Assembly: GCF_031769215.1 (NCBI RefSeq) | Contig: NW_026782088.1 | Location: 310,001 to 374,000 of the forward strand | Reading direction: 5' to 3' | Source of the DNA: Ylistrum balloti | Lineage: Eukaryota | Length of the DNA: 64,000 bases | Shown here: positions 18,466-52,600 of the stretch, one piece after another | Layout: every line of letters starts with the position of its first letter | Numbering within the stretch: the first letter of the stretch is position 1 | Program-made: the position numbers and the translations under genes | The notes under the pieces: generated by a model | What the model was told of the DNA's origin: nothing | The model's database searches: none | Seen by the model: the letters and a program-made list of their open reading frames with translations, nothing else

Positions 18466-19070
18466 GTCAGTAGACTTTACAGTTTCTGTTGTCAGTAGAC
18501 TTTACAGTTTCTGTTGTCAGTAGACTTTACAGTTTCTGTTGTCAGTAGACTTTACAGATTATGTTCTCAATAGATGTAATAGTTTCTATTGTCAGTAGAC
18601 TTTACAGATTATGTTCTCAATAGATTTAATAGTTTCTGTTGTCAGTAAACTTAACAGTTTCTGTTGTCAGTGGACTTTACAGATTATGTTCTCAATAGAT
18701 TTAATAGTTTCTGTTGTCAGTAGACTTTACAGTTTCTGTTGTCAGTAGACTTTACAGATTATGTTCTCAATAGATGTAATAGTTTCTGTTGTCAGTAGAC
18801 TTTACAGTTTCTGTTGTCAGTAGACTTTACAGATTATGTTCTCAATAGATTTAATAGTTTCTGTTGTCAGTAGACTTTACAGATTATGTTCTCAATAGAT
18901 GTAATAGTTTCTGTTGTCAGTAGACTTTACAGATTATGTTCTCAATAGATGTAATAGTTTCTGTTGTCAGTAGACTTTACAGATTATATTCTCAATAGAT
19001 GTAGTAGTTTCTGTTGTCAGTAGACAACAATTTCTGTTGTCCCTAGACTTAACAGCTTTTTTGTTGTCAG
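18466..19070. repeat. Compound 25/50-bp minisatellite (GTCAGTAGACTTTACAGTTTCTGTT and a 50-bp dimer)
   Basis: 25-bp and 50-bp units visibly alternate. Confidence 0.9.
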
Positions 19071-20149
19071 TAAACTTTACAGATATAAAAGTACAAGTCC
19101 CAAGAATTTTATCATAAAAATACCAGCTATTATGACTGCTGGGTATTGTTTTGTTATTGAAAGACCTTTTCATGATATTACTGCTGAAATCTAGTATTAA
19201 TGGTTCCATGCTGCAGCTCCTTCAACCAAAGTATTACATTAGTATAAAAATACCAAATATCTATACTAAGTCTTCCTACCATTGATACATCTGTTTGTTC
19301 TTCATAGTTTACTAAATATTGTAGTGTTCAAGGTTTTTTGAAATGAACTCTTGCATCAATGGTTATTCATTATCTTTAGATGGTATGAAGGTTGATTTTT
19401 TCTCCTGTTAGCCATGTGTTATGTACTGAAATACTTTGTGTAGAAATTGTCTATGGCAATCTACAAGAGTGATCTTTTAACCAAACAGTGAACATTCCAA
19501 CCAGGTTCACAATTTTCATTTCCTAACCTGTTGTAGGTATACAGTGACTGGATTTTATGTCCAGATTGTGACATTTCAGTGTGATGACACTATAAAGCAC
19601 ATGCCATTCATCCCATCAACCATGAGCACCATATTCATATGGTCTTTGCTAATACACATACCAGTACATAAAACCCCAAACAAATAAAACCCAAATCTGT
19701 CATTTGACTCATAATCCAGATATCCTTGTAATTTCAGCAAACCACCAGAAATGTCCAGTTGAGGTTTGAAAAGACAAAACATAAATTTATCATATCTCAT
19801 GAAGAGAACCCAAACGAAAGGGTTTGGACACAGATTCATTGTGGTTAGACTGCTGTTCATTGATATCTGCCTGGTTTATACATAATTAACTCGCTGTATA
19901 ATGCCCATGATTATATACAATTATATCACTATATCATGCCCGAATTTTATACACAATTAACTTGGTGTATAATACCCCTGGTGTATACACAATAATGTCA
20001 CTGTATAATGCCCCTGGTTTATATACAATTTTCATATCCCACTTAAAAATATAGATATATGCATAATTGGGTGTATTACCTTCTCTATAAAATTACAAAT
20101 TATCATATATGAAACTTTTGGATATCCAGATAATACAAAATTTTTGATT

Positions 20150-20740
20150 ATTCTGGTATGTAATATTGTGAATTATCCTGGTATATAACAATGTGGATTA
20201 TCCTGGTATATTACATTGTGGATTATCCTGGTATATTACATTGTGGATTATCCTGTTATATAACAATGTAGATTATCCTGGTATATTACATTGTGGATTA
20301 TCCTGGTATATAACAATGTGGATTATCCTGGTATATTACATTGTGGATTATCCTGGTATGTAATATTGTGGATTATCCTGGTATATAACAATGTGGATTA
20401 TCCTGGTATATTACATTGTGGACTATCCTGGTATGTAATATTGTGGATTATCCTGGTATACAACAATGTGGATTATCCTGGTATATAACTATGTGGATTA
20501 TCCTGGTATATTACATTGTGGATTATCCTGGTATATTACATTGTGGATTATCCTGGTATACAACAATGTGGATTATCCTGGTATATAACAATATGGATTA
20601 TCCTGGTATATAACTATGTGGATTTTCATTTGATATAACATTGTGGATTATCCTGGTATATAACAATGTGGATTTCCATTTGATATAACAATGTGGATTA
20701 TCCTGGTATACAACAATTAGGATTGTCCTGGTATCTAACA
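20150..20740. repeat. 25-bp minisatellite (GTGGATTATCCTGGTATATTACATT)
   Basis: About 23 tandem units. It explains the repetitive ORFs at 20291 and 20416. Confidence 0.92.
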
Positions 20741-21839
20741 TCTAAAATGGTGGAAGTATGACCTATTTGTAACATTCAGTGCTATCAAACCATGGATTAT
20801 CCTTCTATGTGACACCACAGATACATTATGGATTTTGTTCTTTATAAACCATGGATTATTTTCAATATAAAACCACTTAGTCCCCATATTTAAAAAGTAT
20901 ATGGATTATTTTCTCTTAAAAATTGTTTACTCCTATATGAGCAGTAGATATTGCACAAAACAAAAAAAGGCATGCTTTATAAATGTTAACTTACTGACTT
21001 TACATGAAATCTCTAACAGTTTGTCATGTTTGATCTGATACATTTTATAGCTTGTAATAAGTATCTCAACTAAGAAAATGAGTCTCCTGACATTCTTATT
21101 TCTCTGATAATATTTCAATTTTGTAATACTTATAATGAGAGTGGTATACCCTTAGAATGGATCACTGGGTCCCGGGTTTGAACAAAAGGGACTTTCGAGG
21201 GTTGGAAACTCATTTTTTAAATCATTTTAGTTTGGCAAATGAAATCAAAGTGCATTGACACCTTGTTGAGAGTGGTTTTGTCTTCATAGTTAGACACATT
21301 GGTGTATATTATTGGTCAATGGTGATAATTAGTCTAATTGATGTATCCTCTTTGATCTCAATAAAGAAAATGACTAGTTCAAGTAGATTATGGAATTTGA
21401 TGCAGCATTTAATACTTTGTACAGAATCATGAGCATTGCCATTCACAGCCATTTTCTTTTCAACTCAGAAGATTTTCATCATATGATCATGTTAATAACC
21501 TTTCTTTTGTTCTGATTGATATGTTTAAAAATTTATTGGTAGCTAGTCCATCACTTAAAAAAAACAAATTTCATTAATTTTATACGCATCATTTTTTTTT
21601 TTTTTCACTACAAATGTTCTCATGTTTTAAATAATTGTTCCACTGGTAAATGTATCTAGATAGAATTCCTCGATGTGTGCCATATCATTCTAGTGCTTTG
21701 TATGTAAACCAATCTGCAATTTTTGAAAAAAAATGTCTGCAATATGTGTTTGGGTAGTTTGCAACTTTTTATGGACAGGATGCTTTTCTGGCAGTAGTGT
21801 CTGTCAAGAGGAGATAATTGTCCTCTGTCTGTCAAGGGG

Positions 21840-25993: not shown

Positions 25994-28900
25994 ATGCAAC
26001 ATAGCTTATTGTGCATTGTTAGCGGAACTAAAATGACAGAACAGATGACAAAGAGGACCATTGGAAGCGTGGACCGTGATGTGTCATACCATGAGGATAT
26101 GTTTCGTTCGAAAAAACTGAAAGTGAACTCAGATGAAGGCACTGAACAGACTGCTAAGCAACAACACAATGAGGACCGAAACAACAGCAACTGTCCTGTG
26201 AAAGTAAAGGTAAATGTTTCTGAATGCAACAAACATCCAAAAGTTACTGGTACTGATCCGACTCCATATAGAATTGTTGTTAGCGAGAATCACAAGGACA
26301 GAAATTTTGACGATGAGGCACAAAAAGCATCAACCATACTAAAAAATATAGTGATGGAAAAGATGAATGATAGAATATCTGATTCACAAGAACATTCAAC
26401 ATCAGCTTTTCAAGGAGTTCAGCAACATAATTATCAACCCATGGTACCGTTGACATGCAAAATTCCATTCTCACGCCCAATAGCACCAATACGCTATCTT
26501 CCTGTCCAGAGCAACGTTTATCCACAATTCGTGAGACACAACGCTACTACGGTCGGAAATCTGGCATCACTACCTGCTCAGGTTGGTATGCCAAGAATGG
26601 TTCAACAGCCGGGAAAAACGATGGTCCAGCCAATTCCACCGGTGTCTTCAGTTACGAGAACTTTGCTACCGACATGCGGGGCATTGCCAACAGTTATTCC
26701 AACGTCAACTGGAACAGCCACCCAATCAACAGGAACCATGACGTCGATAAATGATCCTAGTTTGCCAAGTAATGAATACTTCAGCAATATTACTAGCCCG
26801 GCGATTAAAACTACTGTTCAGGTTATGCCTGGTAAGTACAAACATGACATTGATGATATGTATATCTCATACATTACTGTAAACACATATTACTTTAAGC
26901 ATTCATTGGAAAGTGAACGCAAGATATCGAAAATGTATGGTCAGTGTCTTAAATATAAGCTGTGTTTTGGCGAGAGTAAAGAAAGACAGAAGTGGTGAGC
27001 CTCTGGCAAGCGACTTTTGTCTTTCTGTCTCGAGCTTGGTGGAGTACATGTCACAAGTCACGTGTACAGTAACTGTTGTAAAGCTTGATTTAAGAATTTG
27101 TATGTGTAGCTTTACCAGCATCGGAAATAAGACACATAGTGGACTCACGATTTTGGTTTTAAATTTAGAAACTATGATAATAATATCTGAAATCGAAAAC
27201 GTTCTTAAGGATAAACTTTTTTGAGAAGTAAAAAAAAAAAAGTAAATAAGTTATCATTTTTTCTGGTGATAATTTTTGGAAAGGTTGGATTTGAAAAGAA
27301 AAGTAGAAGCAAAAGCATTATATTGTTGCACTACGTTTTTGATACAGGCGTCAGAAAATGTGAAACAGTAAAAAATAAACGTTCACATATTGAGATAAAG
27401 GTGAAGGGGTGGGATGGGGATAACGGAACCTGGTTCGTCAAACCGGGGTGGGTGGGGATAACGGAACCTGGTATCACTTACGGGGGCGTGTGGTGATAAC
27501 GGAACCTGGTATCACTTACCGGGGCGGGTAGTGATAGCGGAACCTGGTATCACATACAGGTGCTGGCTGGGATAATGGGACCTGGTATCACATACCGGGG
27601 TGGGTGGGGATAACGGAACATGGTTCGTCATACCGGGGCGGGTGGGGATAGCGGAACGTTGTATCACATACGGGTGCTGGTGGGGATAGGTGTCAGTTTT
27701 ACCCCCATGGCGGTAGGAGAAAGGGGTACCTGGTACCACAAACTGGGATACCGGGATACTGGAGGATTTATGACCTTAGTTTCCTACTACTTCCAATGCT
27801 TTGCCAAGTGTTTGAAATGTCAGAACCAGCAGCAGTATATCTAAAACTGTCCATGATTAAACACATCGTATGAATGAAATGCTATGTTTTCCACAATACC
27901 AGGCACATCAATGATGTACAAAACCCCAGGCGCAACTTTCAGAAACCGACATGGCAAAGTCAAACGCCCGATGAACGCGTTCATGGTTTGGGCGCGGAAC
28001 TACCGGAGTCGTCTCTCTGAGGAAATGCCACAAGCTTCTAATGCACAAATCAGCGTGCGACTCGGAGAGATATGGGGAAGTATGTCGCTTGCCGAGAAGG
28101 AAAAGTTCTTCAGGGAAGCGGAACGCATCAAGCTGCAACACAACCGAGATTTTCCAGGTAAATAGCTTATTTATCCTTATATATGTCAAAGACTCGGATG
28201 GTTTAAAGTTCAAAGGTCTCATACCCACCAGACATTCTGAGACTTTGTTCCGAAAACTAGATAGTGTAACATTGAAGACAATGCTGCATTTTTTGGAACA
28301 TTTTCTTCAGGTTGGTAATGTCGATAGAATCGAAGTTCTTATAACACAACCAGAAGCAGATTATAGTTTGATGTTTCGATGATTACACGGTCACCTTCAT
28401 CAGACAAATGACCAGTGTGGAGCGTACTAGCACTGATGTACGTTGTGTACGAGATGGTACAGAATCGACAAACTTTTTAGGTTGCACTATAATCCAATGT
28501 ACACCGAGGTTGAAAATAGTGTGACGAGATGGTTAACAGATTATAGACCAAACAAATACACAAGATGGTAACAATGTACTGTAGTCAATTCGACTACCCT
28601 TTGTTTAACACTTGGTCAGAGTTGTGCGAGTCTTATTAAACAAATCCTCAATTTTTTATAGTTTTCATTGATTCAAAATTAAGGATACACATGTATACAT
28701 ACGTATAAAATTAAATCTTTTCCTGATGTACAAAATTGCTATGGGTTAGGAAACCTGAATATTGTTTCTCTCTTTGAGTCGAAGTGACTGAACATCTAGG
28801 AACAAGATGGCGTTTATATATATTAATTATGCTATATCATAGGCAAGTTGTCTTTTAAAGATATATGTAGCGTTTTGAAATGCTCAGTAAAACACTATTT

Positions 28901-34020: not shown

Positions 34021-35584
34021 TTTTGATTTTGTAAGACCTAGAAAGCTATTAAGTAATGTTTCCCATCATCGCTCCTTTCGATTGGCGAACAAGAAACGTA
34101 ATTCTTCCAAGTTTGTATGGAAACTTCGTATGGAAGAATTTGTGAATGAACTGAGCCAGTGAAAACTATTTCGTTCTACTGAAATTGATGAACTAAAGTT
34201 CGAGAAGGACGGAGTAAAGGCTGCACTGGCTATTATCGTATGTGTTTTTGTTCCAAGTTTTCAGGTTAGAGGTGGTAGATATAACTAGTAGACTTAAGTC
34301 TCAGAAGCTTTGCCAAAGCCTGATGCTTGCCATGTTTTAATTAATTAGAATGATGACACGGTTCAGAATATACATACGTACATCATGTTCTTTCCAACTT
34401 TTTAAAAATAATTAAATATTTAAAAAGGATTAAATCCATTGAATTTTGAGGCTAGTGCAACTCCTCATCTACATTTTAATATTTCTTGTGACCTTTCGAC
34501 CCTGACTCGCCTGTTAAGTTTCAAAGCTTTGGGTCCCTAGCATCACCGCCGAGATCTAAAAGGACGAATCAGCTTTATTATGCAGTTTAATTGTGATCAT
34601 TGTTTAGTACTACTGTATCTAGTTCTGTGCATAAAGGTTCTATGATATCATTTTACAATCATTTGTCAACGAGAAAAGACGCTATTTATCATCCGTGGTC
34701 ACATATAATCTAGACATGACAGCTTGAACGGTAACATTGCTTGCTAACTGTTAATTAGGGTCAAAGAAATATATTTGTTTCTCAAGATAACGGAGTTTCC
34801 TCTTCAGTCATGACTGTGTCCTTAGACCAAATATTTCACTGAAATTGCTCTGGATAGCACACGACACGACGCTGCATGATGTTCAATTAAATAACCACCT
34901 AGTTTCAGGATACAGATTACACCATGTAAGTTTTTTGACGGTTAATCGCTGAGACAAACTAATATTTCTGATGTGATCATTTGTTGGCCTTTCCATATCC
35001 TTCCCATTTGTTATACGTTTCGGGTAGGATAGCGTGTCTTTGACACGCCGCTTAACGAAACACTAATGCCATTTATTACTCGCCTGCTACTCATCGACCG
35101 GTCCAAAAGTCAAGACACCACTACGACTTTGTTTTAGGAGTCGCACTTTAAATTAGGCGAGTGTAAAAAAGTACCAGTCGTACCTTGCGAGCATCGCCTC
35201 AGTCGCCAAACTTCCACATTCCTCTCTGGAGATGGCTTACCGAATTGCAATTTCAAGCAACGAGTCTGTTAAAATCGCCCTATATCTGTTATCCGTCTTT
35301 TAAATAATTCTTATCATCGCTAGTTGACAGTGGGGCTGATCATAACAACAAAATGGCTGACAGGGGGCCATGTTTGATTTTGACAATGAAAATTAGTTAT
35401 CGCTATTCTCTATTACCATTAGCGACCTATAATCACTATTTCTTGACAGTAACTGGATGTTTTTTCTCGACTCATAAACAATGTCTAGAATTCTCTATAT
35501 CTTGTACTGCTTTTAATTTCAATCTTCACAACCCTTCTTCTGTAGGAATGCATGCATGGATCATGGATTATGTCTTCATTTAGT

Positions 35585-38014: not shown

Positions 38015-41000
38015 CTAGTCCTGTGGGGGCAGCTGTGTCCAGTCAATAGGAGTCTTGCCTTTACCCTTCAGGTATGTGTTACATTTGGAAAAGTGTTTGC
38101 AGCCCATGAAGCCTCGGTGAGCAGAAAGAGGTGATGGGTGGACACCCTTCAGAACACAGTGCTTTTTCTGAAATGACAAGAAGTGGTGATATCTTTGAGG
38201 TTTAATATCGAGGTACAAAATATTTCAACTTTGAGGTACAAATTATTTGAACTTTGGGGCATGAAACATTTAAACTTTGAGGTTCAAATTATTTTACCTC
38301 AAGGTACAAATCAATTTAAATCTGAGGTACAAATTATTTCAATTCTGATGTACAAATCTTTTAACTTTGATGCTCAAATCACTTCAACTTTGGGGTATGA
38401 ATAATTCTAATGTGCCCAGGTACATACTATTTCAACAAATCATTTTCATTTTGAGCTAAACAAATTTTTTCTTTGAGGTATAAATAATTTTAAACCATTA
38501 AATCTGCCTGATGTACATGTAGACAGATTAGAAACACACAGATACAAGTCTGAGGTTGTGAAGGTAGACTTATTTAATATTTTGCAAATATCTTTCCCCT
38601 GAGTTTTCAATATATAAATTTCAACCGCACACACATACATTTTTATAGATGTTCACAAATATATTTTATAGATTTACACTTACATTTTTATAGATGTTCA
38701 CAAATATATTTTATAGATTTACACTTACATTTTTATAGATGTTCACAAATACATTTTTATAGATGTTCACACATACATTTTTATAGATGTCACACATACA
38801 TTTTTATAGGTGTTCACATATACATTTTTATAGATGTTCACATATACATTTTATAGATGTTCACATATACATTTTTATAGATGTTCACACATACATTTTT
38901 ATAGATGTTCACACATACATTTTATTGATGTTCACACATACATTTTATAGATGTTCACATATACATTTTATAGATGTTCACATATACATTTTTATAGATG
39001 TTCACACATACATTTTTATAGATGTTCACACATACATTTTATAGATGTTCACATATACATTTTATAGATGTTCACACATACATTTTTATAGATGTCACAC
39101 ATACATTTTTATAGATGTTCACATATACATTTCATAGGTGTTCAAATATACATTTTTATAGGTGTTCATATATACATTTTATAGATGTTCACACATACAT
39201 TTTTATAGGTGTTCACATATACATTTTTATAGGTGTTCACACATACATTTTTATAGATGTTCACATATACATTTTTATAGGTGTTCACACATACATTTTA
39301 TAGGTGTTCACACATACATTTTCATAGGTGTTCACATATACATTTTTATAGGTGTTCGCACATACATTTTATAGGTGTTCACATATACATTTTATAGATG
39401 TTCACATATACATTTTTATAGGTGTTCACACATACATTTTATAGGTGTTCACACATACATTTTTATAGGTGTTCACACATACATTTTTATAGGTGTTCAC
39501 ACATACATTTTATAAGTGTTCACATATACATTTTTATAGGTGTTCACACATACATTTTTATAGATGTTCACATATACATTTTATAGATGTTCACATATAC
39601 ATTTTTATAGGTGTTCACACATACATTTTATAGGTGTTCACACATACATTTTTATAGGTGTTCACATATACATTTTTATAGGTGTTCACATATACATTTT
39701 ATAGATGTTCACATATACATTTTTATAGGTGTTCACACATACATTTTATAGGTGTTCACACATACATTTTTATAGGTGTTCACATATACATTTTTATAGG
39801 TGTTCACACATACATTTTATAGGTGTTCACATATACATTTTTATAGATGTTCACACATACATTTTATAGGTGTTCACATATACATTTTATAGATGTTCAC
39901 ATATACATTTATAGGTGTTCACACATACATTTTATAGGTGTTCACACAAACATTTTATAGGTGTTCACACATACATTTTATAGGTGTTCACACATACATT
40001 TTTATAGATGTTCACATATACATTTTTATAGGTGTTCACATATACATTTTTATAGGTGTTCACACATACATTTTATAGGTGTTCACACATACATTTTTTA
40101 AGGTGTACACATACTTTTTTATAGGTGTCAAGCTTTGAAAATGAACTCTACAAATATTAAATCTACAATTCTTCAGAACGTTCAATTCATGAGGACAGCC
40201 CAAATTTCAGGGAGAATAAAAAGATATGATAAAGTAACAAAAGTTTTTAGACAACTGAAAATATTCACTATTTGAATGACATCCCTTGGCACAAGATTAA
40301 AATGATGAGGCATTTTCAATCCCCCTCTATAAATATGAAAAAAAAAAAGAAAACAAATAAAAAATAAATAAATAAAAATTGTCTAAGCTCCCCTAAACCC
40401 GTAACAGCTGAAACTATCTAGAATAAAAACGATGAAACAATTGACACGTAGATCCGGATTTAATTGTCCCAGCTTATGAAAGTCATAACTAGTTGTACAC
40501 CACCAGGAGACCAGATCAATTCCACATACTACACGGGTATGGCCTTGTTTACCTAGGTATATACATGTATGTTTACTATGTGAAGTAGAATTCTGGTTAC
40601 GGTAGATGAACATACCTAGGGCTTACTCACTTTAACTGTAAACTATGTACACAAACTGAAAGTGAGCCTGAATGTATGCAGTTAGTCTGCTATAAGGCTT
40701 GGAAATCTACCGGACTGGTATATTTCCCTTCCCAAGCAACTTACAGGTACATATATTATCAGTATTTTATCATTATTTTGCAATGTTTCCATCAGACTGG
40801 CACAATCTAAGTACAACTAAATGCCATTGCATATCAGTATTTATAAGGACAAATTGATGTCTAGAGTATATACTATCTGTGTAGTTTGTACAGGTTTCAG
40901 TAACATGTATGTAGGTCATGTTATTGGTTATTGTTATTGGTGTATGCTGACACCAATTGTCGGTGGTGGAGCTCCGACTTTAAGTACACATAAATGTAGG

Positions 41001-44000
41001 TATGAGGCATTTGGGAAGACCTGTAGAAACTGTCAAGGTCTGTTAAAATCCCCAGGACTGTATCAGTGTTAAATAAAATCCCCAGGACTGTATCAGTGTT
41101 AAACAAAATCTGCTTTTACTACTTTCGTAGACCAGTAGAAACTCTCAGGGTCTGTTAAAATCCCCAGGACTGTATCAGTGTTAAACAAAATCTGCTTTTA
41201 CTACTTTCGTAGACCAGTAGAAACTCTCAGGGTCTGTTAAAATCCCCAGGACTGTATCAGTGTTAAACAAAATCTGCTTTTACTACTTTCGTAGACCAGT
41301 AGAAACACTCAGCGTCAGTGTTAAACAAAATCCTCAGGACTGTATCAGTGTTAAACAAAATCCTCAGGACTGTATCAGTGTTAAACAAAATCTGCTTTTA
41401 CTACTTTCGTAGACCAGTAGAAACTCTCAGGGTCAGTTAAAATCCTCAGGACTGTATCAGTGTTAAACAAAATCTGCTTTTACTACTTTCGTAGACCAGT
41501 AGAAACTCTCAGGGTCTGTTAAAATCCTCAGGACTTTATCAGTGTTAAACAAAAAAGGCTTTTACTACTTCAGTAGACCCAAAGGAATGCTTAAGGTCTG
41601 TTAAAATCCTCAGGAGTGTATCACTACTATACAAAGATAGACTTTCTGAATTACAAAATGTATCAAATATATATCAAAACTTGATATTCTCAGCTTTGTT
41701 TGGATAGGGGCTCAAGACTGACCATTGCAAATAGACTTTTTTTTATAATGTAGTCCCTTCCTTTAGCATCCAGGGGTTGGAGGTTGGGGTTTGGAGGGTA
41801 AATAAACTGTTTTAGACAATTTCTAAATAAATGAGAAGCAATACGGATGTTTTGTATTCAGCAACCCCATATGTCTTCCCTCTGAATATGAGCCATTTGC
41901 TGTGGCTAGGTTTTGATCCTCACTGTAAGCTGGTAATGACCCAACAGCACCATCATAAAAGTTTTTGAGGTACAAAATAATTTACTTAGAACATGCAATG
42001 TAGGATGTTGGGCAATGGCATTCACAACAGATATGAGTGACACACCTGACCATCAGATTACTAGATAATTGTCCATGAAAACATGCAACCTGATAAAGGT
42101 TACTTATAGAGAAACCTGTGACATAGTCTGAACTATTGTTTACATCCTAATCCTGTTTTGTTACAGACCTGACTAAGGCCATGGCATGTTCCTGTAGGGA
42201 GCTCTCCATACTGCTATCAACGTACCTGGACAGGAGAGTGATCGGAACACAGAGGAATATCAACAATAGGAGAAAGGTCATGGCTATTGAAGAAACAATA
42301 CATAATAAAGGCCAAAACATCAGCACATTTCTGTGTGGGGACGCATCTGATGGCACCAATGTACCAGGCTTGAATAGTGATATCTTGATTGTTTACAATG
42401 ATGTGATGGTTTTGTCTCCTGAACACAACGTTCCTCCGACAGATAAAACGACACTCACCATAAACGAAGATGACAGTCGACCTGGGTACGTAGCTCTACA
42501 ACTAACACAAACAGGAAAGATGTGTAGTACAGTGCTACAAAACTCATTTGTTCATGTTGGGAACGCTGTATTTGTGTCAAGCGACATCTTTCAGGAACAA
42601 ACCACCATCCATCACAGTGACATGGGTTTGCCAGGTAAATCAAATGTACCAAGAAGTACCCAGATTAAAACAGACTACCTGCACAGCTTTCAATGTAACA
42701 GTTGGCCTAAGAGGGCAAAAGAATGGGAAAGGCGTATACGTCTGTCTGGATGGCCATCACAAACTTTGATTGACAGAATTGTTCAAAAAGGTTGTCATCT
42801 TGTCCCGATAAGGGAAAGATTTTTTATGGATAAAACGTCGCAATGGAAGATATCATTTGCATCTGCAGAAAGATTTTTAATTCATTCCTTCAGCAATGTT
42901 CAGTTGAAAGTTTATTGTTTAATGAAATATTTTTTTGAAGAAATTAGAGATACCCTGACAAAAATAACTGGAGAAGACAGTATCCTACCATCTGATTCCT
43001 TAAAAACAGTCATGTTTTTTGCATTAGAAAATGCTCATCAAAATGTGTGGCAAGAACAAAATCTATTTTACTGTTTCTGGTTTTGCTTTAATATTCTGCT
43101 ATCATTTGTCAAGACAGGACACTTGCCCAACTATTTCATTCCAGCCAACAACATGTTCCTGGGAAAGGTAAATCATCAAAACAGAAAGAAACTCTTTCAT
43201 ATTCTAAATTATTTCCATAAGAATAAGTTACTTTGTTTATCATTCGGAAAATTTTTTCAACCACCTTTATTGGAAAGGATTTGTAATTCAAAAACACAAA
43301 AGGAACTGAAGTGTTCACAACATGTAAGCGAAGTCGAGTATCAAGACGATGCAAGCATCTTTTTCGGATCAGTGTCTGTCTCAAATCAGTGCACCTCTAT
43401 GAGACCAGCGATGAGTTTACTCATGAAATCACAGTCAGAGGTGGAGGAAGCCATTGCATATGGATATACACTAAGGAACATCTCTTTATTTGCACAGCAT
43501 GATTATTGTCACCACATAGCTGGATCTTCACACAACAAGACCAGATACAAAAGGACAAGAAAATGTAGACACCAGATAATACTTTGTGCTGCTATGGGAA
43601 CATGTACTGAACTCTTGTACTTAGCAACATTTTATTTCCTGACAGGCAACTATTCTAAGTCTCTAGAGATATGTAGAAATGTCTTGTCACAGCCTTCTTA
43701 TTACACAGAGGGAACCACAGATCTACCACCAAAACAAAGAATATCATATTTACAGGAATACTGTGGAAAAGGTTACACATTAATATACAAACTTAAAAAA
43801 ACACTGACAAAATCAATTGGTTTTGGAAAAGAAAGTCTGTTTCTTCCTTGTCTTCAACCAGAGGTTGTAAAGTGTCCATCGGGCCTGTACATACCCCCAC
43901 TACCCTACACCATCTTTCTATCCTTCCTCTGCTGTAAGGAACTAGGAGACATCAAAGGATATGAAGCCGCTCTACACAGTCTGATTGTAGTGAAATATGA

Positions 44001-47000
44001 TGATCTACAGGGAGCACACAGACACTGGATAGTTCACACACTCCTGGGACTCTGCTATGAAACTTTGGATGACCATACACGAGCTGTCCGAGCTTACATG
44101 GAGTCAGCACAAACAAAGACAAGATACCATGACTTCAATCCTGCCCCAGAGAGAATAGAGGCTCTACAGAGGTTAGACACTGGATAGCAGAAAAAAAACT
44201 AGATGTCTAGCTAACAAGCTAGCACACTGTAGATAACTGAGACTCTACAGAGGTCGGACACTGGATAGCAGAATAGATTTGATGTCTAGCTAGCCAGCAT
44301 ACTGTTAGTGACCACTGACCACTACAGAGAATTGAGGCTCTACAGAGGTCAGACACCTGATAGCAGAATAAATTATCCTCGGTAGATGCCTAGCTAGCAC
44401 ACTGTATTGTTAGTGACCACTGACTGCTAGTTATACTCGTCAGATTATGTTAGGCATGTTCAAGAAGGAACATTACCGATTGGCACTTTATTTTTGATAT
44501 TTCGTGATTTTGATGACACTCTTAGCTCCTCTCAATGTGTAATAAGTTACTGTGATGGAGACATTGTGTATTATGGGACTTTTAAGGATGTGGTTGAACC
44601 TGTTGATGTCAAATTCAACATCCACTTGTATCCATTGTCCATCAGATCTAATATAAGAATCATTGTAGCGTATCAAATCTCCAATACATTTACTCTCCGA
44701 TAAGGAATTCTTAACATGGAGTTGGCTGCCTGATTAAATGACCTTTGCATTATCAATTTGACCAAAATGTTTTCGTGTCTTTTATTATAAAACACGGGCT
44801 TAAGGTTCTAAAACTTGACATTGGTGATAATATCCATTGTAAGGTACTAACTCATAACCTATGTTTAACTAGAAGTAAAAAAATGTGAAAAGAGGATTTA
44901 TATGGGAAAACTTATGAAAAAAGCAGTATAAATTGTATTATCATTCGATACTGCACAACAGCAGTGTAGTTTTAATCAATTTAGCTTGCTTCTGGAAGTT
45001 TGTAATTGGAAAAAGATTTAATGACTTTTTTGATAAATTACAATTACCCTTTTTGGAGTTTCTTAATTTAGATATAATCATTAAGTTTATGTCAAACCAA
45101 GGAAAATGTGACTAAACATTTGAAGACTTATCCATTTGCATGATGTTGATGATGTTGATGTTGTGTATATACATGTTATCCTTCCCATCATATACACTAG
45201 TAATGATAACAAATCATGATTTCAATAGACCAGAAACATTGATAATGAAGATTTCTAACTTGATGAAAAACCTGAACAGCAACTGTTTAATGGCATACAC
45301 ATGTATCATTGGTTTCTTAAATGAGAGCTGATGTTACAAATGGTAATTGAGGATGAAATATACTTACAAAAGTTTTTCAATAAGTACAAATCAAAGTGAA
45401 AGTACCTTTTAACTTGTATGTATATGGCAAAATATAACATCCTAGATTATTTATTTCACATCTAAAACGTATTTATATGATATCATTATAAGCCTGACTT
45501 GCCACAATAATTTATATTATCACAACAGCCTTTTATCATTGGTCAGTTCACTTGGAGTGGTTGATCTGTTAGGCTTAAGATTTCAGTTAAATGTTGATAT
45601 TTTAGGCTTCAGGTTTCAATTAAATGTTGATATTTTTGGTTTCTGGTTTCAGTTAAATGTTGATATTTTAGGATTCTGGTTTCAGTTCAATGTTGATCTG
45701 TTAGGTTTCATGTTTCAGTTCATTGTCAATCTAAGATTTTTATTCAGTTCAATGTTGATCTGATAGGTTACAGGATTTCAATTTAATGTTGATCTGTAAG
45801 GTTTTAGTTAAACATTGATCTGCAAGGTTTTAGTTCAATGTTGATCTGCTATTTTTCAGTTCAATGTTTTTAGCTAGGTTTCAGTTCAATGTTGATTTCC
45901 TAAGTTTAGTACAATGTCATAATATAAGACAACAAATCAATGGAACAAAATTCACATCAATATTATAACAAAAATAAAATTAAATATAATTCCAATTTCA
46001 CATGAATATTATTATTGCAAAAATAAATTATCATTCCTGATTTTTTTTAATCATTATTAAAACGGTTTCTTCTGATAAACATTTTCCCTGTATTCCATCC
46101 ATGTAGAATATTTGATCATACCACATCTAGGTATTGAGAAGTTTCTTGAAATATGGGTCAGTCTAACTCTTTTTGGCCCAACCTATCAATCCCTTAGGAC
46201 CGGATCTCAACCAAGAATTTATTGATACAAGGCTGCATATCGTATTTCATCAAAATCTGTTCATCTTTACTCAAAACTATTGTGTTCACAAGTTCCACTG
46301 GGAATGAATTATAAAGGGTCACAACTGTCAGTTACGATCAAATCTGTTCCATTTATTCAAATTCTTCCTCAGATCTCGTATATATAGGGCTGTATACAAA
46401 GTCATCAAAATCTGTTGATATTTATTTAATTTATTGTGTTTACAAGATTCCATGGTAATAAAACTGCAAAGGGCCATAACACTGTTTTGGTATGAAGGTT
46501 TTACCTGGTCTATACAAGCTCCCTTTTTCTGTGCATATGACCCCCACAAAATAAACACCAGCTCTGTTTGACTTTTGTTGAGCCATGATATGACAGCATC
46601 AGTGAATTTCTCCCAGCCTTTATCTTTGTGAGAGTTGGCCTGGTGTTCACGCACCGTCAGACAGGAATTCAGTAGAAGCACACCTTAAATAGAATCACAA
46701 AACAACAGATGTACCAGAAAGTGATGTTATATCCAGAACTGGGTCTCTTGATTAAAGAGAAAAGCAATATAAATATTTAAAATTTTAGCAACCTAGACCC
46801 AGCTTTGACCATGTATATAGGTCAAGGTCATTCATGTGAACAACCTTGGTACCCATTATCCAGGCATGCTTTTGCTCCAATAGTAAGAACTCTGAACTCT
46901 TGGTTATTAAAAAGCCATGAAAAAGACAATTTGACCCCTGTGACTTTGAAAAGTCTAAGTTGCTCCTTTTAACAGTCTTAAGAATTCTTCATTGCAGCAG

Positions 47001-50000
47001 GATAAGGGCCCTATATCATGACCAAGGACCTTATGTTTATTAAGATATAGTTGTTTGAAGGGAAAAGTTGACACCAGACAGACACTGCTCCTTTATACTT
47101 AAGCTCACTTGCCATTCGAGAAGATGAGCAAAAAACCTGATCAGTGTACTGTGACCATGCTGGTGGAATCCTTTTGTTTCACCTACCTTGTTCAGCCCAG
47201 CCTATCAGTGTACCATGACCAGGGTGCTGGAATCCCTCTATATCAGATATTAGCTCCTTATACATGTTCTCTAAGCTGTAACAAACAAGATAAACTATCC
47301 AGTTTGATTGGATGGCTATGTCTTAGGGAGGATAGTTTGTGTTCTGTTGAGTTCTGCAGTGGTCCACAGTCTGATCCCAATCAGTAGAGTGTAAGTATAG
47401 TAAATCTGCAGTGGTCCACAGTCTGATCCCAATCAGTAGAGTGTAAGATTAGTAAATCTGCAGTGGTCCACAGTCTGATCCCAATCAGTAGAGTGTAAGA
47501 TTAGTAAACCTGCAGTGGTCCACAGTCTGATCCCAATCAGTAGAGTGTAAGATTAGTAAATCTGCAGTGGTCCACAGTCTGATCCCAATCAGTAGAGTGT
47601 AAGATTAGTAAATCTGCAGTGGTCCACAGTCTGATCCCAATCAGTAGAGTCCTTTATCATCCCTTAAAAACTTTGTCACAGTCGTAGGATAACACAATGC
47701 ACCAATAAAAAGGACTTAACCTTCTTACTGAGACTAAAGAGAATTTTCATGCAAAATTTGTAGAGTGCAAGAACTGAAAAAGTCTAGGCTCTGATCCCAG
47801 TCAGTAGAGTGTAAGATTAGTAAATCTGCAGTGGTCCAGAGTCTGATACCTAGGAAAGACACAGAAAATCAATTACCTCCCTTTTATATAATGGAGGAAC
47901 TTGGGAAGTATTGAATCAAATTCTAGCCATTACAGAGAATTTCTCTTTAGCTGTGTTTTAGTATTTAAATCTACTAAGCCACAGGTTTGGCACCTAGAAT
48001 GACCATGGTATTTACAGTCAGTAGGGTTGTACATATATAGAGGTAATTTCTACTATCTCACCTTGGTGGTGGTTTCACTCCTTTCTGTACACTGAAACAC
48101 AGACCTGTAAAATAACACAAATGTCAGAATGAAATCACTCTTCATTGACGAAATATTGATACTGAGCTGCTCAAAATGTTTCATATAAATCTTTTCCTAT
48201 CTACTTTCATGTTCACAAGGTCAAATAGTAAGGCAATTGCGAAGGGCCATACCTCAGTAACTTAAAATTGAATCTGTCCCATTGTGTAAAACACACGAGA
48301 TCTTATTGATAGAAGGCTGCATACTAAAGTTTCATCAAAATCTATCCTTATTTACTCAACTTAAGGTCATGTTAACAAGAAAAGCAAGATGCCCAATGAC
48401 ATACCTATAGTCAGGTGACCTAACATGTTCTTACCACTTCAAGGTTTTGGTATGACTGCAAAAATTTGAACCATTTGAAATCAAATATTTATTGATTTAA
48501 TCTATAACTTACTGTGAGCTTATTGTGGTTGGATCTATAACTTACTGTGAGCTTATTGGGGTTGGATCTATAACTTACTGTGAGCTTATTGGGGTTGGAG
48601 CTATAGCTTACTTGGAGCTTATTGGGGTTGGGTCTGTAGACCTATCATGAGCTTGCTTTGGTCAGGTCTGGTCTAGTCTGTAGACCAATCATGAGCTTGC
48701 TTTGGTCAAGTTTGGTCTGGTCAGGGGTCAGGTCTATAGACTTACCATGAGCTTGTTCCGGTCAAATCTGGTCTGATTAGGTCTGTAGACATACCATGAG
48801 CTTGTTCTGGTCAGGTCTGATCTGGTCTGGTCTGTATACTTACCATGAGCATGTTCTGGTCAGGTCTGATCTGTCAGGTCTGTAGACTTACCATGAGCTT
48901 GTTTTGATCAGGTCTGATCTGTCAGGTCTGGTGGGGTCTATAGACTTACCATGAGCTTGTTTTGATCAGGTCTGGTCTGTAGACTTACAATGAGCTTGAT
49001 TTGATTAGGTCTGGTGGGGTCTATAGACTTACCATGAGCTTGTTTGATCAGGTTTGGTGAGGTCTGTAGACTTACCATGAGCTTGTTTTGATCAGGTCTG
49101 GTGGGTCTGTAGACTTACCATGAGCTTGTTTTGGTCCATGGTATGGATCCTGTCCCAATATCACAACCTTCACCTATAATATAGACATTGTGTTAGACAA
49201 AACAGAGTCAGACAATGCATATAATGGCTGAACCAAGAAATGCTCACAAGGCAACGTATGATTATGATAATTCGCTTCAAACAATGTGTTAAAAGTTTTC
49301 CAAAGTTTAAGTTAATATCAACGCTGAATGAGTCATATATACCCAGCAATAACCCAGTAATACACCAATACACTAATTCTTTCTACATCTATGTAAACTT
49401 ACAGACTAAGTCATATCTAACCCACCAATATACCTAGACATCTAATTCTACATCTATGTAAACTTACAGATTAAGTCATATCTAACCCACAAATATACCT
49501 AGACATCTAATTCTACATCTATGTAAACTTACAGATTAAGTCATATATAACCCACCAATATACCTAGACATCTAATTCTACATCTATGTAAACTTACAGT
49601 CACCAATATACCTAGACATCTAATTCTACATCTATGTAAACTTACAGATTAAGTCATATCTAACCCACCAATATACCTAGACATCTAATTCTACGTCTAT
49701 GTAAACTTACTGAGTCCAATGTGCAATACTGTGTCCAGGAGAACACTTGGTTAGCAGGTGGATATATTGTGTGTTTAGCTCTCTCTGCCTCCACAAACTT
49801 TGTCAGCTAAAATATAACACATTCATTATTCATGTTCCAAACACTTAAATTGTATCAGAATAGTTTCACTTTTTCTAAACAATCATTGTCCTTAAAAAAA
49901 CTCATAGAATATCAAAGTGTTACGATTTAAATGATGCATCAGACCCATTTGGTGATGGTTATCCTAGAGTATGGTACTTATACATCATCAAACAGTCAAA

Positions 50001-52600
50001 TCCATCTCCTGATACCAAAATGATCAAGAAATGGATTACTTCACTCGCCTTTTATTTACTAATGAGGTAACAGAGGGTATAACCATATAAAGCTAGTAGG
50101 GACAAGATGATGCTGGTGTTACTTCAAATTCAAAGTTCTATTTATATAAAAGACAAAACAATACAGGAAACTGAAAAAACTATCACTACTTTGCAACAAT
50201 TTACAAGAAACAGATAAAGAATTTAGGTAATTTGACGCATTAATATTCTTCCAAGGAGGGTCAATGTACAGGAACTGACCTTGAAACTGATCACTATGGG
50301 ATGTGTAGTAGTTTCATTACTGGAGATGACCTTGACACTGGTCACAGAGGTCTATGTACTGGAACTGACCCTGACACTGATCACTATAAGGTTTATGTTG
50401 TGGTGCCTACCTTGATACCGAGAGTCTATCTACTGTAACTGAAATGGACAGCTCACTAGAGTTTATTTCTGCAGCTGACCTTGACACAGATCACTAATGT
50501 TTATTACTGGAGCTGGTGCATTGACTTAGATACATTTTGGTTTACAGACCTTTGATAGAATTTCAAACTATTTTCAGACAATAACAGACAACCAATTAAA
50601 TACAGGTCCTTTATCACTCATCTAGCTTTGTTCGACTGAAATTAATTCATTCAATCCAAAGAAAAAGGATTTTTTTAAGGTTTATATTGATTTCTTAATT
50701 GGGTCCAATACCTATACCCCAGAGTGTCAACAAAACCACTGATACAAGTTTCCTTCACCAAAGAATTCTTCAGATATAACTGGGACAGAAACCTGATATT
50801 CTTATAGACAAAATAAGGATTTTAAAGAATTTGCACCTACTTACCCAATAATGCCTCAAAAATCCTGCCCCAGGGGGCCAAGACCAATCGTTTATGTAAA
50901 TTTGATTCCCTTCACACAGGAATGGTTTAGACTAAATATGGGCCAAATCAAATCATTCCTATAGCAGAAGTAATATCTTACAGAAATTGTTCTATTTCCC
51001 CTTTTAGACTTGCCCCGCTTGGCCGAGAGGGGGCTGAAACCCATCGTATATACAAAATTGCTTCCCTTCCTCAAGAATGCTTCAGGTCAAATTTAGGCAA
51101 CAACTGCTAAGTTTTTCAAGACAAGTAGCAATTTGTTTAAAAAAAAAGCTGACAAACCAGGTAAGCTAATAATTATTTTTCATTTTTCTCAGAGAGTTGA
51201 AAAGCCATACAAAAATCTGGAAAGCCATGGAATTAATTCATTAAGATATATCAGGTATGCACTGTATCTGCAGCACAGTTGTATTAGGATCATGCGTAAC
51301 ATTTGCTTGAAATTTAATTCATCCAGATATAAAAGATATTAAATGATTAAGTATTACCTCTAGGAAATAATTCTTTGAAAATTCTTTCTCCAATGCATTT
51401 TTCCAGGTCTCCCCAAAGTTGACGACAAGACCTTTAGAGTTGGCAGTTTTAGAATGAAGCTTTGCTATGGCTTTTATTCTATTCTGTTCCATTCGGGCCT
51501 TCTGTTCTGGTGACAAAGCTGTGGATGTACCATCTGCACTTGACTTTGTTTCTGGAGTCAATTCTTGCTTCTCTGTTTTGGTCTTCTTAGATGGTGTAAT
51601 ATTCTACAATTTGAACAAGATATTGACAAACAAAAGAAACCTAACCATCCAATTTTAAGTAATATAGTAAATATTTACAAATTTTGTTGAAGTAACAGCC
51701 ATTATAGTAAGTTAAAGATGAACAACTGTTTTATAAGACAACTCTGTCAAATAACCACTATATGTAGTAATGATCACTTTGACAAGGGAAGTCAATTAAG
51801 TACTGCGGAGGAGGAAAGGTATGGAAAAGGAATACATAGCACCAAAGGAGTCATGTTTGGACAGTGTCTCTTTAAACCATTGGAGTCTGCAATCATATCA
51901 ATGACAGGTCAGAAGCATTCCCACTTCAATAGAAGATGCCTTTAAAGTCATATTGATATTTATTCCTGGAGTTTTTGGCCCTAGAGTCACTTTTTTTCTA
52001 TTGTGCAGCTCTGAAATGTATGAAAATATTTCTAAGAAAGCAAATAGGAAGTTTGAGGGAAGCTGGTCAATTTGAAAGTGATCGGCATGGACTTGGATAT
52101 GGGTAAGGCAAAAATACTAGTTATTTTTCAAAGATCCAAGAAAACACCAACATTTTGAATCCGTCTCTGTTATATTGTTATTACATATATATATATATAT
52201 CCTTTTGTGTTATCACACATGACGTCATGGCGACATGGAGTTATCTACACGGTGTTGTCACCAAGGAAATTCAGAATACATAATTATATTTATATCAGTC
52301 CAATTAAATGTTTCAAGAATACTTGCAAAATAATTATGTCACAAAATACATAGATCTAATTTCGAATGCATATTACAAATGAATGAACTAGTCACGATTT
52401 TGAGTGTGTGCAGTACTTAGTTTGATTATAAAGTTGATTTTATTTTGACTATTGTGTGTTTACTTCGACGACCCAATGTGCCGCTGATGTGTGCCTGATG
52501 TAAACATCAATACCTGTTCGTCCTGTGTCATTTCTGTTGAACGCTTATTGGGTGTTGGTCCAGTCTTAAAAAATGCTGAAATTTTAGATTGACCTATCAT
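38015..52600 (-). CDS. UNG: Uracil-DNA glycosylase (family 1); complement(join(38015..38167,46505..46683,47187..47275,48062..48104,49119..49173,49711..49806,51358..51603,52514..52600)), 315 aa
   Basis: Eight phase-compatible GT-AG exons (948 nt). The N-terminal PIP-box-like [11 protein letters not shown] resembles human UNG2 MIGQKTLYSFF. It also has the RPA-binding-type helix [13 protein letters not shown], catalytic motif A GQDPYH, GLCFSV, HPGHG, GVLLLN, VFILWG and motif [12 protein letters not shown]. Confidence 0.96.
38630..40125. repeat. 23-24-bp minisatellite (ATAGGTGTTCACACATACATTTTT) in the last UNG intron
   Basis: About 60 units. It explains the ORFs at 38787, 39115 and 39162. Confidence 0.95.
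41040..41620. repeat. 82-bp compound tandem repeat with 30-bp subunits
   Basis: TCCCCAGGACTGTATCAGTGTTAAACAAAATC recurs at an 82-bp period (41161, 41243) and in shorter units. Confidence 0.88.
42181..44187 (+). CDS. Mab-21/cGAS-like nucleotidyltransferase-fold protein (cGLR type) with C-terminal TPR-like helices, 668 aa; nested antisense in UNG intron 7
   Basis: Uninterrupted 2007-nt ORF with a GCCATGG start and an upstream acceptor TTTGTTACAG at 42166. Mab-21 family motifs: [63 protein letters not shown]-like segments [18 protein letters not shown] and [19 protein letters not shown]. Confidence 0.88.
   Translation: MACSCRELSILLSTYLDRRVIGTQRNINNRRKVMAIEETIHNKGQNISTFLCGDASDGTNVPGLNSDILIVYNDVMVLSPEHNVPPTDKTTLTINEDDSRPGYVALQLTQTGKMCSTVLQNSFVHVGNAVFVSSDIFQEQTTIHHSDMGLPGKSNVPRSTQIKTDYLHSFQCNSWPKRAKEWERRIRLSGWPSQTLIDRIVQKGCHLVPIRERFFMDKTSQWKISFASAERFLIHSFSNVQLKVYCLMKYFFEEIRDTLTKITGEDSILPSDSLKTVMFFALENAHQNVWQEQNLFYCFWFCFNILLSFVKTGHLPNYFIPANNMFLGKVNHQNRKKLFHILNYFHKNKLLCLSFGKFFQPPLLERICNSKTQKELKCSQHVSEVEYQDDASIFFGSVSVSNQCTSMRPAMSLLMKSQSEVEEAIAYGYTLRNISLFAQHDYCHHIAGSSHNKTRYKRTRKCRHQIILCAAMGTCTELLYLATFYFLTGNYSKSLEICRNVLSQPSYYTEGTTDLPPKQRISYLQEYCGKGYTLIYKLKKTLTKSIGFGKESLFLPCLQPEVVKCPSGLYIPPLPYTIFLSFLCCKELGDIKGYEAALHSLIVVKYDDLQGAHRHWIVHTLLGLCYETLDDHTRAVRAYMESAQTKTRYHDFNPAPERIEALQRLDTG
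44158..44410 (+). repeat. Three degenerate tandem copies of the Mab-21 gene stop-codon region
   Basis: CTCTACAGAGGT(T/C)(A/G)GACAC(T/C)(G/T)GATAGCAGAA occurs at ~44162, ~44243 and ~44338. Confidence 0.8.
45555..45920. repeat. Degenerate ~30-bp tandem repeat (TTTCAGTTCAATGTTGAT core)
   Basis: Recurring core. It explains the ORF at 45539. Confidence 0.8.
47348..47850. repeat. 52-bp minisatellite in UNG intron 5
   Basis: CTGCAGTGGTCCACAGTCTGATCCCAATCAGTAGAGTGTAAGATTAGTAAAT occurs about 6 times, with a partial copy at ~47790-47850. Confidence 0.92.
48495..49135 (-). repeat. Minisatellite containing copies of the UNG exon-4 3' end and splice donor
   Basis: Repeated GACTTACCATGAGCTTGTT is the reverse complement of exon 4 AACAAGCTCATG|GTAAGTC. 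Confidence 0.88.
49375..49710 (-). repeat. 65-bp tandem repeat starting at the UNG exon-3 splice donor
   Basis: ATGTAAACTTAC (minus strand GTAAGTTTACAT) occurs six times. The period is 65 bp (49442, 49507, 49572), with one shorter unit. Confidence 0.9.
50750..51090 (-). repeat. Interspersed repeat in UNG intron 2 (same family as 1-330 and 35585-36330)
   Basis: CCCTTC(A/C)...AAG(A/G)AT(G/T)CTTCAG...AAAT(A/T)TGG motifs, inverted relative to 35585-36330. Confidence 0.45.

What the first reader, a model, noticed from the sequence alone, without database searches (positions are those of the whole stretch)
38168..46504. Innate-immune-type Mab-21/cGLR gene nested antisense inside the last intron of the DNA-repair gene UNG
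Seen: UNG exon 7 ends at 46505 and exon 8, which carries the essential HPSPLS motif, starts at 38167. The 8.3-kb intron between them contains an intact 668-codon opposite-strand ORF with an intronless CDS. All other UNG introns are under 1.6 kb. Known: Mab-21/cGAS-like receptors make cyclic-dinucleotide signals after nucleic-acid sensing and are strongly expanded in bivalves. UNG is a conserved housekeeping base-excision repair enzyme. Inference: a mobile or duplicated cGLR copy landed in UNG. Convergent transcription could couple or oppose their expression, with readthrough needed to make functional UNG, and the insertion may be a presence/absence variant.
Basis: partly seen in the sequence, partly recalled or inferred. 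Interest (0 to 1): 0.7.

Follow-up and report, generated by a model that had tools for sequence, protein, structure and literature searches.

The report
Mab21-TPR gene inside scallop UNG intron
A scallop's uracil-repair gene UNG really does carry an intact immune-type Mab21 gene, pointing backwards, inside its last intron; the arrangement is old and conserved, so it is an ordinary gene-within-a-gene and not a recent insertion.

Summary
UNG lies on the minus strand in 8 coding exons. Exon 7 ends at 46505 and exon 8 (HPSPLS) starts at 38167. The intron between them is 8337 nt; the other six are 503-1551 nt. Inside it, on the plus strand, is an intact 668-codon ORF (42181-44187) with a cGAS/Mab21 fold and a TPR-like tail.

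- The ORF belongs to a large scallop Mab21-TPR family.
- Its orthologue in Pecten maximus sits in the same place and orientation next to UNG exon 7. Its orthologue in Argopecten irradians sits next to the same SOX30-like gene.
- dS is above 1 and dN/dS is about 0.2, so the nest is ancient and the gene is under selection.
- It was present in all four DNA runs laid, and no mobile-element hallmarks were found.
- Its catalytic signature is eroded (GS to GD; the first acid is N in the assembly and D in the runs). It is probably a non-catalytic Mab21 paralogue, not a working cGLR enzyme.

No RNA data were available, so expression and any interference with UNG remain untested. Sister paralogues also sit antisense in introns of other genes. 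Verdict: real, ordinary, mildly interesting.

The parts
52514..52600 (-). UNG coding exon 1 ([11 protein letters not shown]..., 29 codons; Q-x-x-I-x-x-F-F, a PCNA-box-like N-terminus of the UNG2 type)
   Evidence: the PCNA-box reading comes from established knowledge of UNG2 and was not tested
51358..51603 (-). UNG coding exon 2 (82 codons)
   Evidence: TAG|AAT acceptor, GAG|GTAATA donor
49711..49806 (-). UNG coding exon 3
   Evidence: (TIGR00628 positions 25-52)
49119..49173 (-). UNG coding exon 4 with the GQDPYHG water-activating loop
   Evidence: (TIGR00628 positions 52-72)
48062..48104 (-). UNG coding exon 5 ([14 protein letters not shown])
   Evidence: conserved in P. maximus L001 17040-17110
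47187..47275 (-). UNG coding exon 6
   Evidence: (TIGR00628 positions 83-114)
46505..46683 (-). UNG coding exon 7 (60 codons), equivalent to human UNG 118-177
38168..46504 (-). UNG intron 7, 8337 nt, GTAAAA...TTTCAG; holds the nested gene, a 1.5-kb 24-nt minisatellite (38630-40128) and an 82-nt tandem array (41044-41623)
38015..38167 (-). UNG coding exon 8 (50 codons plus TAG) with HPSPLS, equivalent to human UNG 178-223
42181..44187 (+). Nested single-exon CDS, 668 codons: Mab21/cGAS-fold domain plus a TPR-like C-terminal domain
42337..42381 (+). Degenerate nucleotidyltransferase signature G53-D54 ... N65-S66-D67 (family consensus GS ... D-x-D)
42373..42375 (+). Codon 65: AAT (Asn) in the assembly, GAT (Asp) in all four DNA runs; this is the first catalytic acid position
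42673..42675 (+). Codon 165, third catalytic Asp, retained here (Asn in P0001-P0004)
43216..44184 (+). C-terminal alpha-helical TPR-like domain (residues 346-668)
44144..44374 (+). Three direct copies of the last codons plus the stop-codon region; AATAAA at 44367-44372 is the likely poly(A) signal

Best explanation
This is an ordinary but genuine nested gene pair in a scallop genome. The host is a complete family-1 uracil-DNA glycosylase gene with 8 coding exons and 315 codons. Its last intron has to be transcribed across 8.3 kb to reach the essential HPSPLS exon. The guest, on the opposite strand, is a single-exon member of a scallop-wide Mab21(cGAS-fold)+TPR family. It belongs to an old orthogroup that was already beside UNG exon 7 before the window species and Pecten diverged, and it has been kept by purifying selection. 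In this orthogroup and its sister the catalytic residues are being lost piecemeal. The protein therefore most likely works as a non-catalytic Mab21 protein (a binder, scaffold or regulator acting through its cGAS-like body and TPR tail) and not as a cyclic-nucleotide synthase. Shown here: the gene structures, the fold, orthology and synteny, the selective constraint, and presence in independent DNA samples. Inferred: that both genes are transcribed, that they simply coexist as most antisense nested pairs do, and that the guest has lost catalysis.
For: Host structure:
- Every UNG exon has GT-AG borders and consistent phases.
- Exons 7 and 8 align end to end with human UNG 118-177 and 178-223.

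Guest protein:
- Pfam Mab-21 and Mab-21_C; best solved relatives are cGAS and cGLR1.
- The AlphaFold model has pLDDT 90.5. Foldseek finds cGAS, cGLR, MAB21L1 and MB21D2 over about 380 residues.
- The C-terminal domain matches only TPR proteins, Z 10-11.7.

Family and orthology:
- 68 relatives, nearly all scallop proteins of about 680 aa.
- The window protein groups with P. maximus LOC117320590 and an A. irradians protein at 100% SH-aLRT.

Synteny:
- In P. maximus the order is Mab21(+) then UNG exons 7, 6, 5 and 4 (-), with no HPSPLS exon between them.
- In A. irradians the order is the SOX30-like gene then Mab21, as in the window.

Selection:
- dN/dS is 0.16-0.21 with dS 1.1-1.7, and the ORF is open in all three species.
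- Within the species there are 4 synonymous and 1 non-synonymous differences.

Catalytic sites:
- Ser of GS is kept in 59 of 61 family members (window D, Argopecten N).
- The first Asp is kept in 60 of 62 (window reference N, Argopecten N).
- The third Asp is Asn in P0001-P0004.

Nesting is common in this clade: P0003 and P0009 lie antisense inside a cadherin/adhesion-GPCR gene, and P0005 lies inside another gene.
Against: - No RNA evidence for either gene or for the 46505>38167 junction: no RNA run holds the stretch.
- The ORF is not on record as a called gene anywhere, and its best database relative is 66% identical. Annotation pipelines have therefore not picked it up, which could mean low or no expression.
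- The allele in the DNA runs restores D-x-D (N65D), and the third Asp is intact. Only GS>GD then separates that allele from the active-site pattern, so residual enzyme activity is not excluded.
- The P. maximus scaffold ends before a terminal UNG exon is seen, so nesting there is inferred and not observed.
- A. irradians has no UNG exons around its orthologue.
- dS is saturated, so the ratios are approximate.
- The tree is the quick version.
Confidence: 0.7

Rival explanations
1. Recent insertion: a mobile or freshly duplicated cGLR copy landed in UNG and may still be a presence/absence variant.
For: The CDS is a single exon in a multi-copy family with at least 15 paralogues per scallop genome. 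The intron is five times longer than any other UNG intron.
Against: The orthologue occupies the same position and orientation next to UNG exon 7 in P. maximus, and sits next to the same SOX30-like gene in A. irradians. dS is 1.1-1.7 between orthologues. There are no terminal inverted, long terminal or flanking direct repeats. The ORF is present in all four DNA runs from two studies, and no contig skips it.
Confidence: 0.04
2. Silent relic: the ORF is not expressed and is an unannotated, slowly decaying copy whose catalytic site is already gone.
For: No RNA run was found. The ORF is not on record as a gene product. It carries GS>GD and D65N.
Against: The frame has stayed open for 668-773 codons in three genera at dS above 1, with dN/dS 0.16-0.21 in every domain. 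Polymorphism is 4 synonymous to 1 non-synonymous. The model is very confident (pLDDT 90.5), which is typical of a well-constrained family. The P. maximus orthologue is an annotated RefSeq gene.
Confidence: 0.08
3. Functional sense-antisense unit: transcription of the guest modulates UNG 3'-end formation (polymerase collision, intron retention, cryptic terminal exons). Active UNG output would then depend on guest activity, for example during infection.
For: The essential exon lies beyond the guest, so every productive UNG transcript must traverse it. Nested genes are reported to cause intron retention, exonization and cryptic polyadenylation in hosts (PMC3192792, title and abstract). The P. maximus RefSeq UNG model ends in a cryptic terminal exon between exon 7 and the guest. 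The arrangement is conserved between two genera.
Against: There are no expression data at all. The P. maximus model sits on a truncated 20-kb scaffold and may be an annotation artefact. UNG-sense AATAAA hexamers in the intron occur at the chance expectation, 13 against 11.7. A. irradians keeps the guest without the host, so the guest does not need UNG.
Confidence: 0.12
4. Working cGLR enzyme: the D65 allele seen in the DNA runs is the normal one, and the protein still makes a nucleotide signal, with the TPR tail acting as sensor or regulator.
For: In the runs codon 65 is GAT, which gives D-S-D. D67 and D165 are intact. Most family members keep GS, D-x-D and D. cGLR-TPR fusions are a listed architecture (PMC9980059).
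Against: Ser of the GS motif is Asp here, where 59 of 61 relatives have Ser. The two orthologues and the sister orthogroup have each lost other catalytic residues. This argues that catalysis stopped being selected in this clade.
Confidence: 0.15

Closest known systems
cGLR-TPR proteins of the bivalve cGLR radiation (Li et al. 2023, PMC9980059)
   Same: cGAS/Mab21 fold followed by a TPR-like helical domain. It belongs to a lineage-expanded bivalve family, and most paralogues keep the GS / D-x-D / D signature.
   Different: This copy has GD in place of GS and, in the assembly, Asn at the first acid. It fails the published active-site pattern, and its orthogroup shows mosaic loss of catalytic residues.
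MAB21L1/MAB21L2 (vertebrate Mab21 proteins without a predicted functional active site; PDB 5eom/5eog)
   Same: Same fold (Foldseek E about 1e-9). Conserved under selection despite an incomplete catalytic site. Li et al. note that Mab21L1/2/3 lack a predicted functional active site.
   Different: It is not orthologous: it is a scallop-specific paralogue with an added TPR domain. There is no evidence for a developmental role.
Antisense intronic (nested) protein-coding genes, e.g. Drosophila 2mit in intron 11 of timeless2 (PMC3786989); nested genes and transcriptional interference in mammals (PMC3192792)
   Same: The guest CDS lies wholly inside one host intron on the opposite strand. According to the PMC3786989 abstract, intronic genes make up about 6% of D. 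melanogaster genes.
   Different: Here the host is a small housekeeping repair gene and the guest sits in front of its catalytically essential last exon. Expression relations are unknown.
Crustacean Mab21 proteins that signal outside the canonical nucleic-acid/cyclic-dinucleotide route (PMC12928593)
   Same: A precedent for invertebrate Mab21-family proteins acting in immunity without canonical cGLR chemistry (abstract).
   Different: A different phylum and no TPR tail is reported there. The paper was not read beyond its abstract, and no functional data exist for the scallop protein.

Membership tests
cGLR (cGAS-like receptor) as defined by Li et al. 2023 | cGAS/Mab21 nucleotidyltransferase fold | tested here: met
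   Pfam Mab-21 and Mab-21_C above gathering scores. phmmer to cGLR1 8gjy and cGAS, E about 1e-9. Foldseek to cGAS and cGLRs, probability 1.00, TM (target) 0.6-0.7.
cGLR (cGAS-like receptor) as defined by Li et al. 2023 | h[QT]GS motif | tested here: not met
   The window has L-C-G53-D54. Ser is present in 59 of 61 aligned relatives. The motif is quoted from PMC9980059.
cGLR (cGAS-like receptor) as defined by Li et al. 2023 | [DE]h[DE]h metal-binding pair | tested here: inconclusive
   The assembly reads N65-S-D67-I, so the first acid is lost. All four DNA runs read D65-S-D67-I.
cGLR (cGAS-like receptor) as defined by Li et al. 2023 | third acidic residue, h[DE]h | tested here: met
   T-D165-Y, aligned to the cGAS V-D-I site. 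The spacing from D67 is 97 residues, slightly above the published 50-90.
cGLR (cGAS-like receptor) as defined by Li et al. 2023 | ligand-activated synthesis of a nucleotide second messenger | not testable with these tools
   Needs a biochemical assay.
Nested (intronic) gene pair | guest coding sequence wholly within a single host intron | tested here: met
   ORF 42181-44187 lies inside intron 38168-46504. UTR extents are unknown.
Nested (intronic) gene pair | the host exons on both sides form one functional reading frame | tested here: met
   GT-AG borders, phase 0, and contiguous alignment to human UNG 118-177 and 178-223. This is sequence evidence only.
Nested (intronic) gene pair | both genes transcribed | not testable with these tools
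Family-1 uracil-DNA glycosylase (UNG), the host | GQDPYH water-activating loop and HPSPLS leucine-intercalation loop | tested here: met
   GQDPYHG in exon 4 and HPSPLS in exon 8. NCBIfam ung equivalog models match the exons in order. Exons were searched one by one; the joined protein was not built.
Transposon-borne gene or recent retrocopy | terminal repeats, target-site duplications or a poly(A) remnant flanking the copy | tested here: not met
   No TIR, LTR or flanking direct repeats in 40100-46500. There is only an A8 run after the stop codon. The position is orthologous in other genera.

The most novel reading that the evidence does not exclude
A catalytically eroding sub-clade of scallop Mab21-TPR genes lives, orthogroup after orthogroup, antisense inside introns of unrelated host genes: UNG here, a cadherin/adhesion-GPCR gene, and a third gene. 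The nests have been kept for a very long time. In the UNG case the guest sits in front of the essential last exon, so its transcription could gate production of active UNG. That would link an immune-type sensor-like gene to uracil-DNA repair. In Argopecten the guest seems to have outlived its host at this locus.
Probability: 0.07. Interest if true: 0.6.

Novelty: new member of a known kind. Interest (0 to 1): 0.28.

Why it matters
As it stands this is an annotation point. An intact, selected, apparently unannotated Mab21-TPR gene sits in the last intron of UNG, and gene callers may truncate or split hosts around such guests, as the P. maximus UNG model and the split Y. balloti adhesion-GPCR models suggest.

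It also adds a clean example of a cGAS-fold paralogue that stays under selection while it loses catalytic residues. One of those residues (N65/D65) appears to be polymorphic.

If expression data showed that guest transcription controls how often UNG reaches its HPSPLS exon, it would become a simple natural model of regulation by antisense nesting. Nothing here shows that.

Tried and rejected
The single read-laying run was therefore spent on four DNA runs.
- Pfam did not recognise the UNG exon 7 fragment, so I used NCBIfam and PDB sequence searches instead.
- Mobile-element hallmarks around the ORF: none.
- The sigma-70/terminator scan does not apply to a eukaryote and was ignored.
- The HPSPLS exon in the P. 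maximus scaffold was not found in 18.5 kb. 1.7 kb of that scaffold was not fetched.
- UNG remnants in the A. irradians locus: none, even at E = 5.
- Premature poly(A) signals: UNG-sense AATAAA hexamers occur at the chance level, 13 against 11.7 expected.
- SNP density in the ORF against the flanks: lower, but not significant (5/2007 against 16/2822, p = 0.12).
- Species identity: other agents' notes name Ylistrum balloti. My checks were inconclusive. A 334-aa window ORF had no close database hit, and there were no shared repeats or k-mers with a Y. balloti locus.
- The careful tree did not finish, so the quick IQ-TREE result was used.
Full report
**Observation.** The window carries a complete UNG gene on the minus strand. 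I mapped eight coding exons: 52600-52514, 51603-51358, 49806-49711, 49173-49119, 48104-48062, 47275-47187, 46683-46505 and 38167-38015. Together they make 948 nt, or 315 codons. All introns are GT-AG and the phases are consistent. NCBIfam uracil-DNA glycosylase models match the exon fragments in collinear order. Exon 7 aligns to human UNG catalytic-domain residues 118-177 and exon 8 to 178-223, so the join 46505>38167 rebuilds an uninterrupted enzyme. Exon 8 is the only HPSPLS-coding stretch in the window. Intron 7 is 8337 nt and the other six are 503-1551 nt.

**The guest.** ORF 42181-44187 (+) is 668 codons.
- It hits Pfam Mab-21 and Mab-21_C above their gathering scores, plus sub-threshold TPR models near the C-terminus.
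- Its best solved relatives by sequence are a cGLR1 (8gjy) and cGAS.
- An AlphaFold model built on a 59-sequence family alignment has pLDDT 90.5 and pTM 0.90.
- Foldseek matches cGAS, cGLRs, MAB21L1 and MB21D2 over about 380 residues.
- Residues 346-668 folded alone (pLDDT 90.2) match only TPR proteins, at Z 10-11.7. That range supports "TPR-like solenoid" and nothing more specific.
- AATAAA lies 180 nt after the stop codon.

**Family and age.** The word search found 68 relatives. Nearly all are scallop proteins of about 680 aa with the same architecture, at least 15 per species. The best is Pecten maximus LOC117320590 at 66% identity. A quick ML tree puts the window protein with that protein and one Argopecten irradians protein (100% SH-aLRT). 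The sister orthogroup has members in four scallop genera.

Synteny in the two other species:
- In the P. maximus scaffold, Mab21(+) is followed about 3 kb later by UNG exon 7 and then exons 6, 5 and 4 on the minus strand. No HPSPLS exon is present anywhere in the 18.5 kb fetched.
- In A. irradians the orthologue lies 5 kb downstream of the same SOX30-like gene that ends at 33355 in the window. No UNG exons lie within 10 kb on either side.

Among the three orthologues dS is 1.1-1.7 and dN/dS is 0.16-0.21, similar in all three domains, and all three frames are open. The nest therefore predates the split of the window species from Pecten, and the guest is a selected protein-coding gene. In the gene tree the window protein branches outside Pecten+Argopecten. 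The simplest reading is that the UNG association is ancestral and that Argopecten lost or moved UNG. That last step is inference.

**Population and assembly check.** No RNA run holds the stretch. Contigs from four DNA runs (two studies) tile 41650-43095, 43069-46478 and 46451-47100 at about 99.5% identity. No contig skips the ORF, and none shows a frameshift or stop. The contigs of three runs have identical lengths, so they may not be independent. The fourth run differs. Five differences fall in the ORF. Four are synonymous. The fifth (42373 A>G) changes codon 65 from Asn to Asp.

**Catalytic site.** The family consensus is GS-x2-EG ... SD-x-D-x-M plus a third Asp.

| Protein | GS motif | First acid | Second acid | Third Asp |
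|---|---|---|---|---|
| Window | G-D | N65 in the assembly, D65 in the runs | D67 | D165 kept |
| P. maximus orthologue | GS | D | D | N |
| A. irradians orthologue | G-N | N | D | N |
| P0003 and P0004 (sister orthogroup) | not tabulated | not tabulated | not tabulated | N |

Against the cGLR pattern of Li et al. (h[QT]GS ... [DE]h[DE]h ... h[DE]h), this protein fails the GS element. In this clade catalysis seems to be no longer selected while the protein is. It is best described as a probable Mab21 pseudo-enzyme with a TPR tail. Residual activity of the D65 allele is not excluded. This agrees with the scan's separate note s1-237105.

**How ordinary is the nest?** Antisense intronic genes are common in animals. 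Within this very clade, P0003 (Mizuhopecten) and P0009 (Argopecten) lie antisense inside a cadherin/adhesion-GPCR gene. P0005 lies antisense inside another gene, while P0019 is intergenic. No repeats typical of mobile elements flank the ORF. UNG-sense poly(A) hexamers in the intron occur at the chance level. The idea that convergent transcription modulates UNG is possible. The P. maximus RefSeq UNG model ends in a cryptic exon between exon 7 and the guest, but that model sits on a truncated scaffold and there are no expression data.

**Annotation status.** The ORF is not on record as a called gene, and no identical or near-identical protein exists in the 5.8-billion-sequence collection. Other agents' notes name the genome as Ylistrum balloti. 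I could not confirm this. If it is true, the RefSeq annotation of that species lacks this gene.

**Verdict.** The feature is a new member of two known kinds: nested genes and bivalve Mab21/cGLR-TPR paralogues. It is of modest interest.

Noticed in passing
window 48654-49127 (-), UNG exon 4 donor and intron 4: The exon 4 donor junction AAGCTCATG|GTAAGTCTACAGAC is repeated 11 times at a period of about 44-58 nt, running into intron 4. This is a splice-junction-seeded minisatellite that offers a series of cryptic donors. Earlier notes describe the same repeat type elsewhere in this genome.
   Followed up: partly
window 44144-44374 (+): The last codons and the stop codon of the Mab21 ORF (...CTCTACAGAGGTTAGACACTGGATAGCAG) recur three times in tandem at 81-95 nt spacing. 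The third copy carries the AATAAA.
   Followed up: partly
window 42373: The only non-synonymous difference between the assembly and four DNA runs falls exactly on the first catalytic acid (N65 in the assembly, D65 in the runs). It may be an allele or an assembly error.
   Followed up: partly
L002 (Argopecten irradians CM084274.1) 1-22322: The orthologous Mab21 gene lies between the SOX30-like gene and an RNA polymerase Rpb2 gene with no trace of UNG exons. The host gene seems to have gone from this locus while the guest stayed. The protein also has an insertion of about 90 residues.
   Followed up: partly
L001 (Pecten maximus CACRWE010003442.1) 12530-12570 (-): The RefSeq UNG model (134 aa, on a truncated scaffold) ends in a short cryptic exon (...AGGERNENQSRK*) between exon 7 and the Mab21 gene, and lacks HPSPLS.
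   Followed up: partly
L003, L006, L005, L004: Sister paralogues are also nested antisense. P0003 and P0009 lie in a cadherin/GAIN/7tm_2 adhesion-GPCR gene, and P0005 in a gene with a 411-aa product. In Y. balloti the adhesion-GPCR host looks split into two models around P0004.
   Followed up: partly
window 46746-46927 (UNG intron 6): A short interspersed repeat of very high copy number: summed contig depth is about 13,000-21,000 against about 15 for the flanks. A second moderately repeated element lies at 46200-46563, next to the exon 7 donor.
   Followed up: no
window 38630-40128: A 1.5-kb minisatellite (24-nt unit, about 64 copies, 90% matches) makes up 18% of intron 7. An 82-nt tandem array at 41044-41623 lies about 560 nt upstream of the Mab21 start codon.
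   Followed up: no
window 35331-35407; L001 14-1017 and 6933-8233: One unit of a 155-bp satellite that forms long arrays to the left of the Mab21 gene in P. maximus. There it is annotated within a 'Hobbit'-domain gene model that may be spurious.
   Followed up: no
window 25994-26998 (+): A 334-aa ORF with a single database relative (41% identity, from an assembled sequencing run) and no Pfam domain.
   Followed up: no
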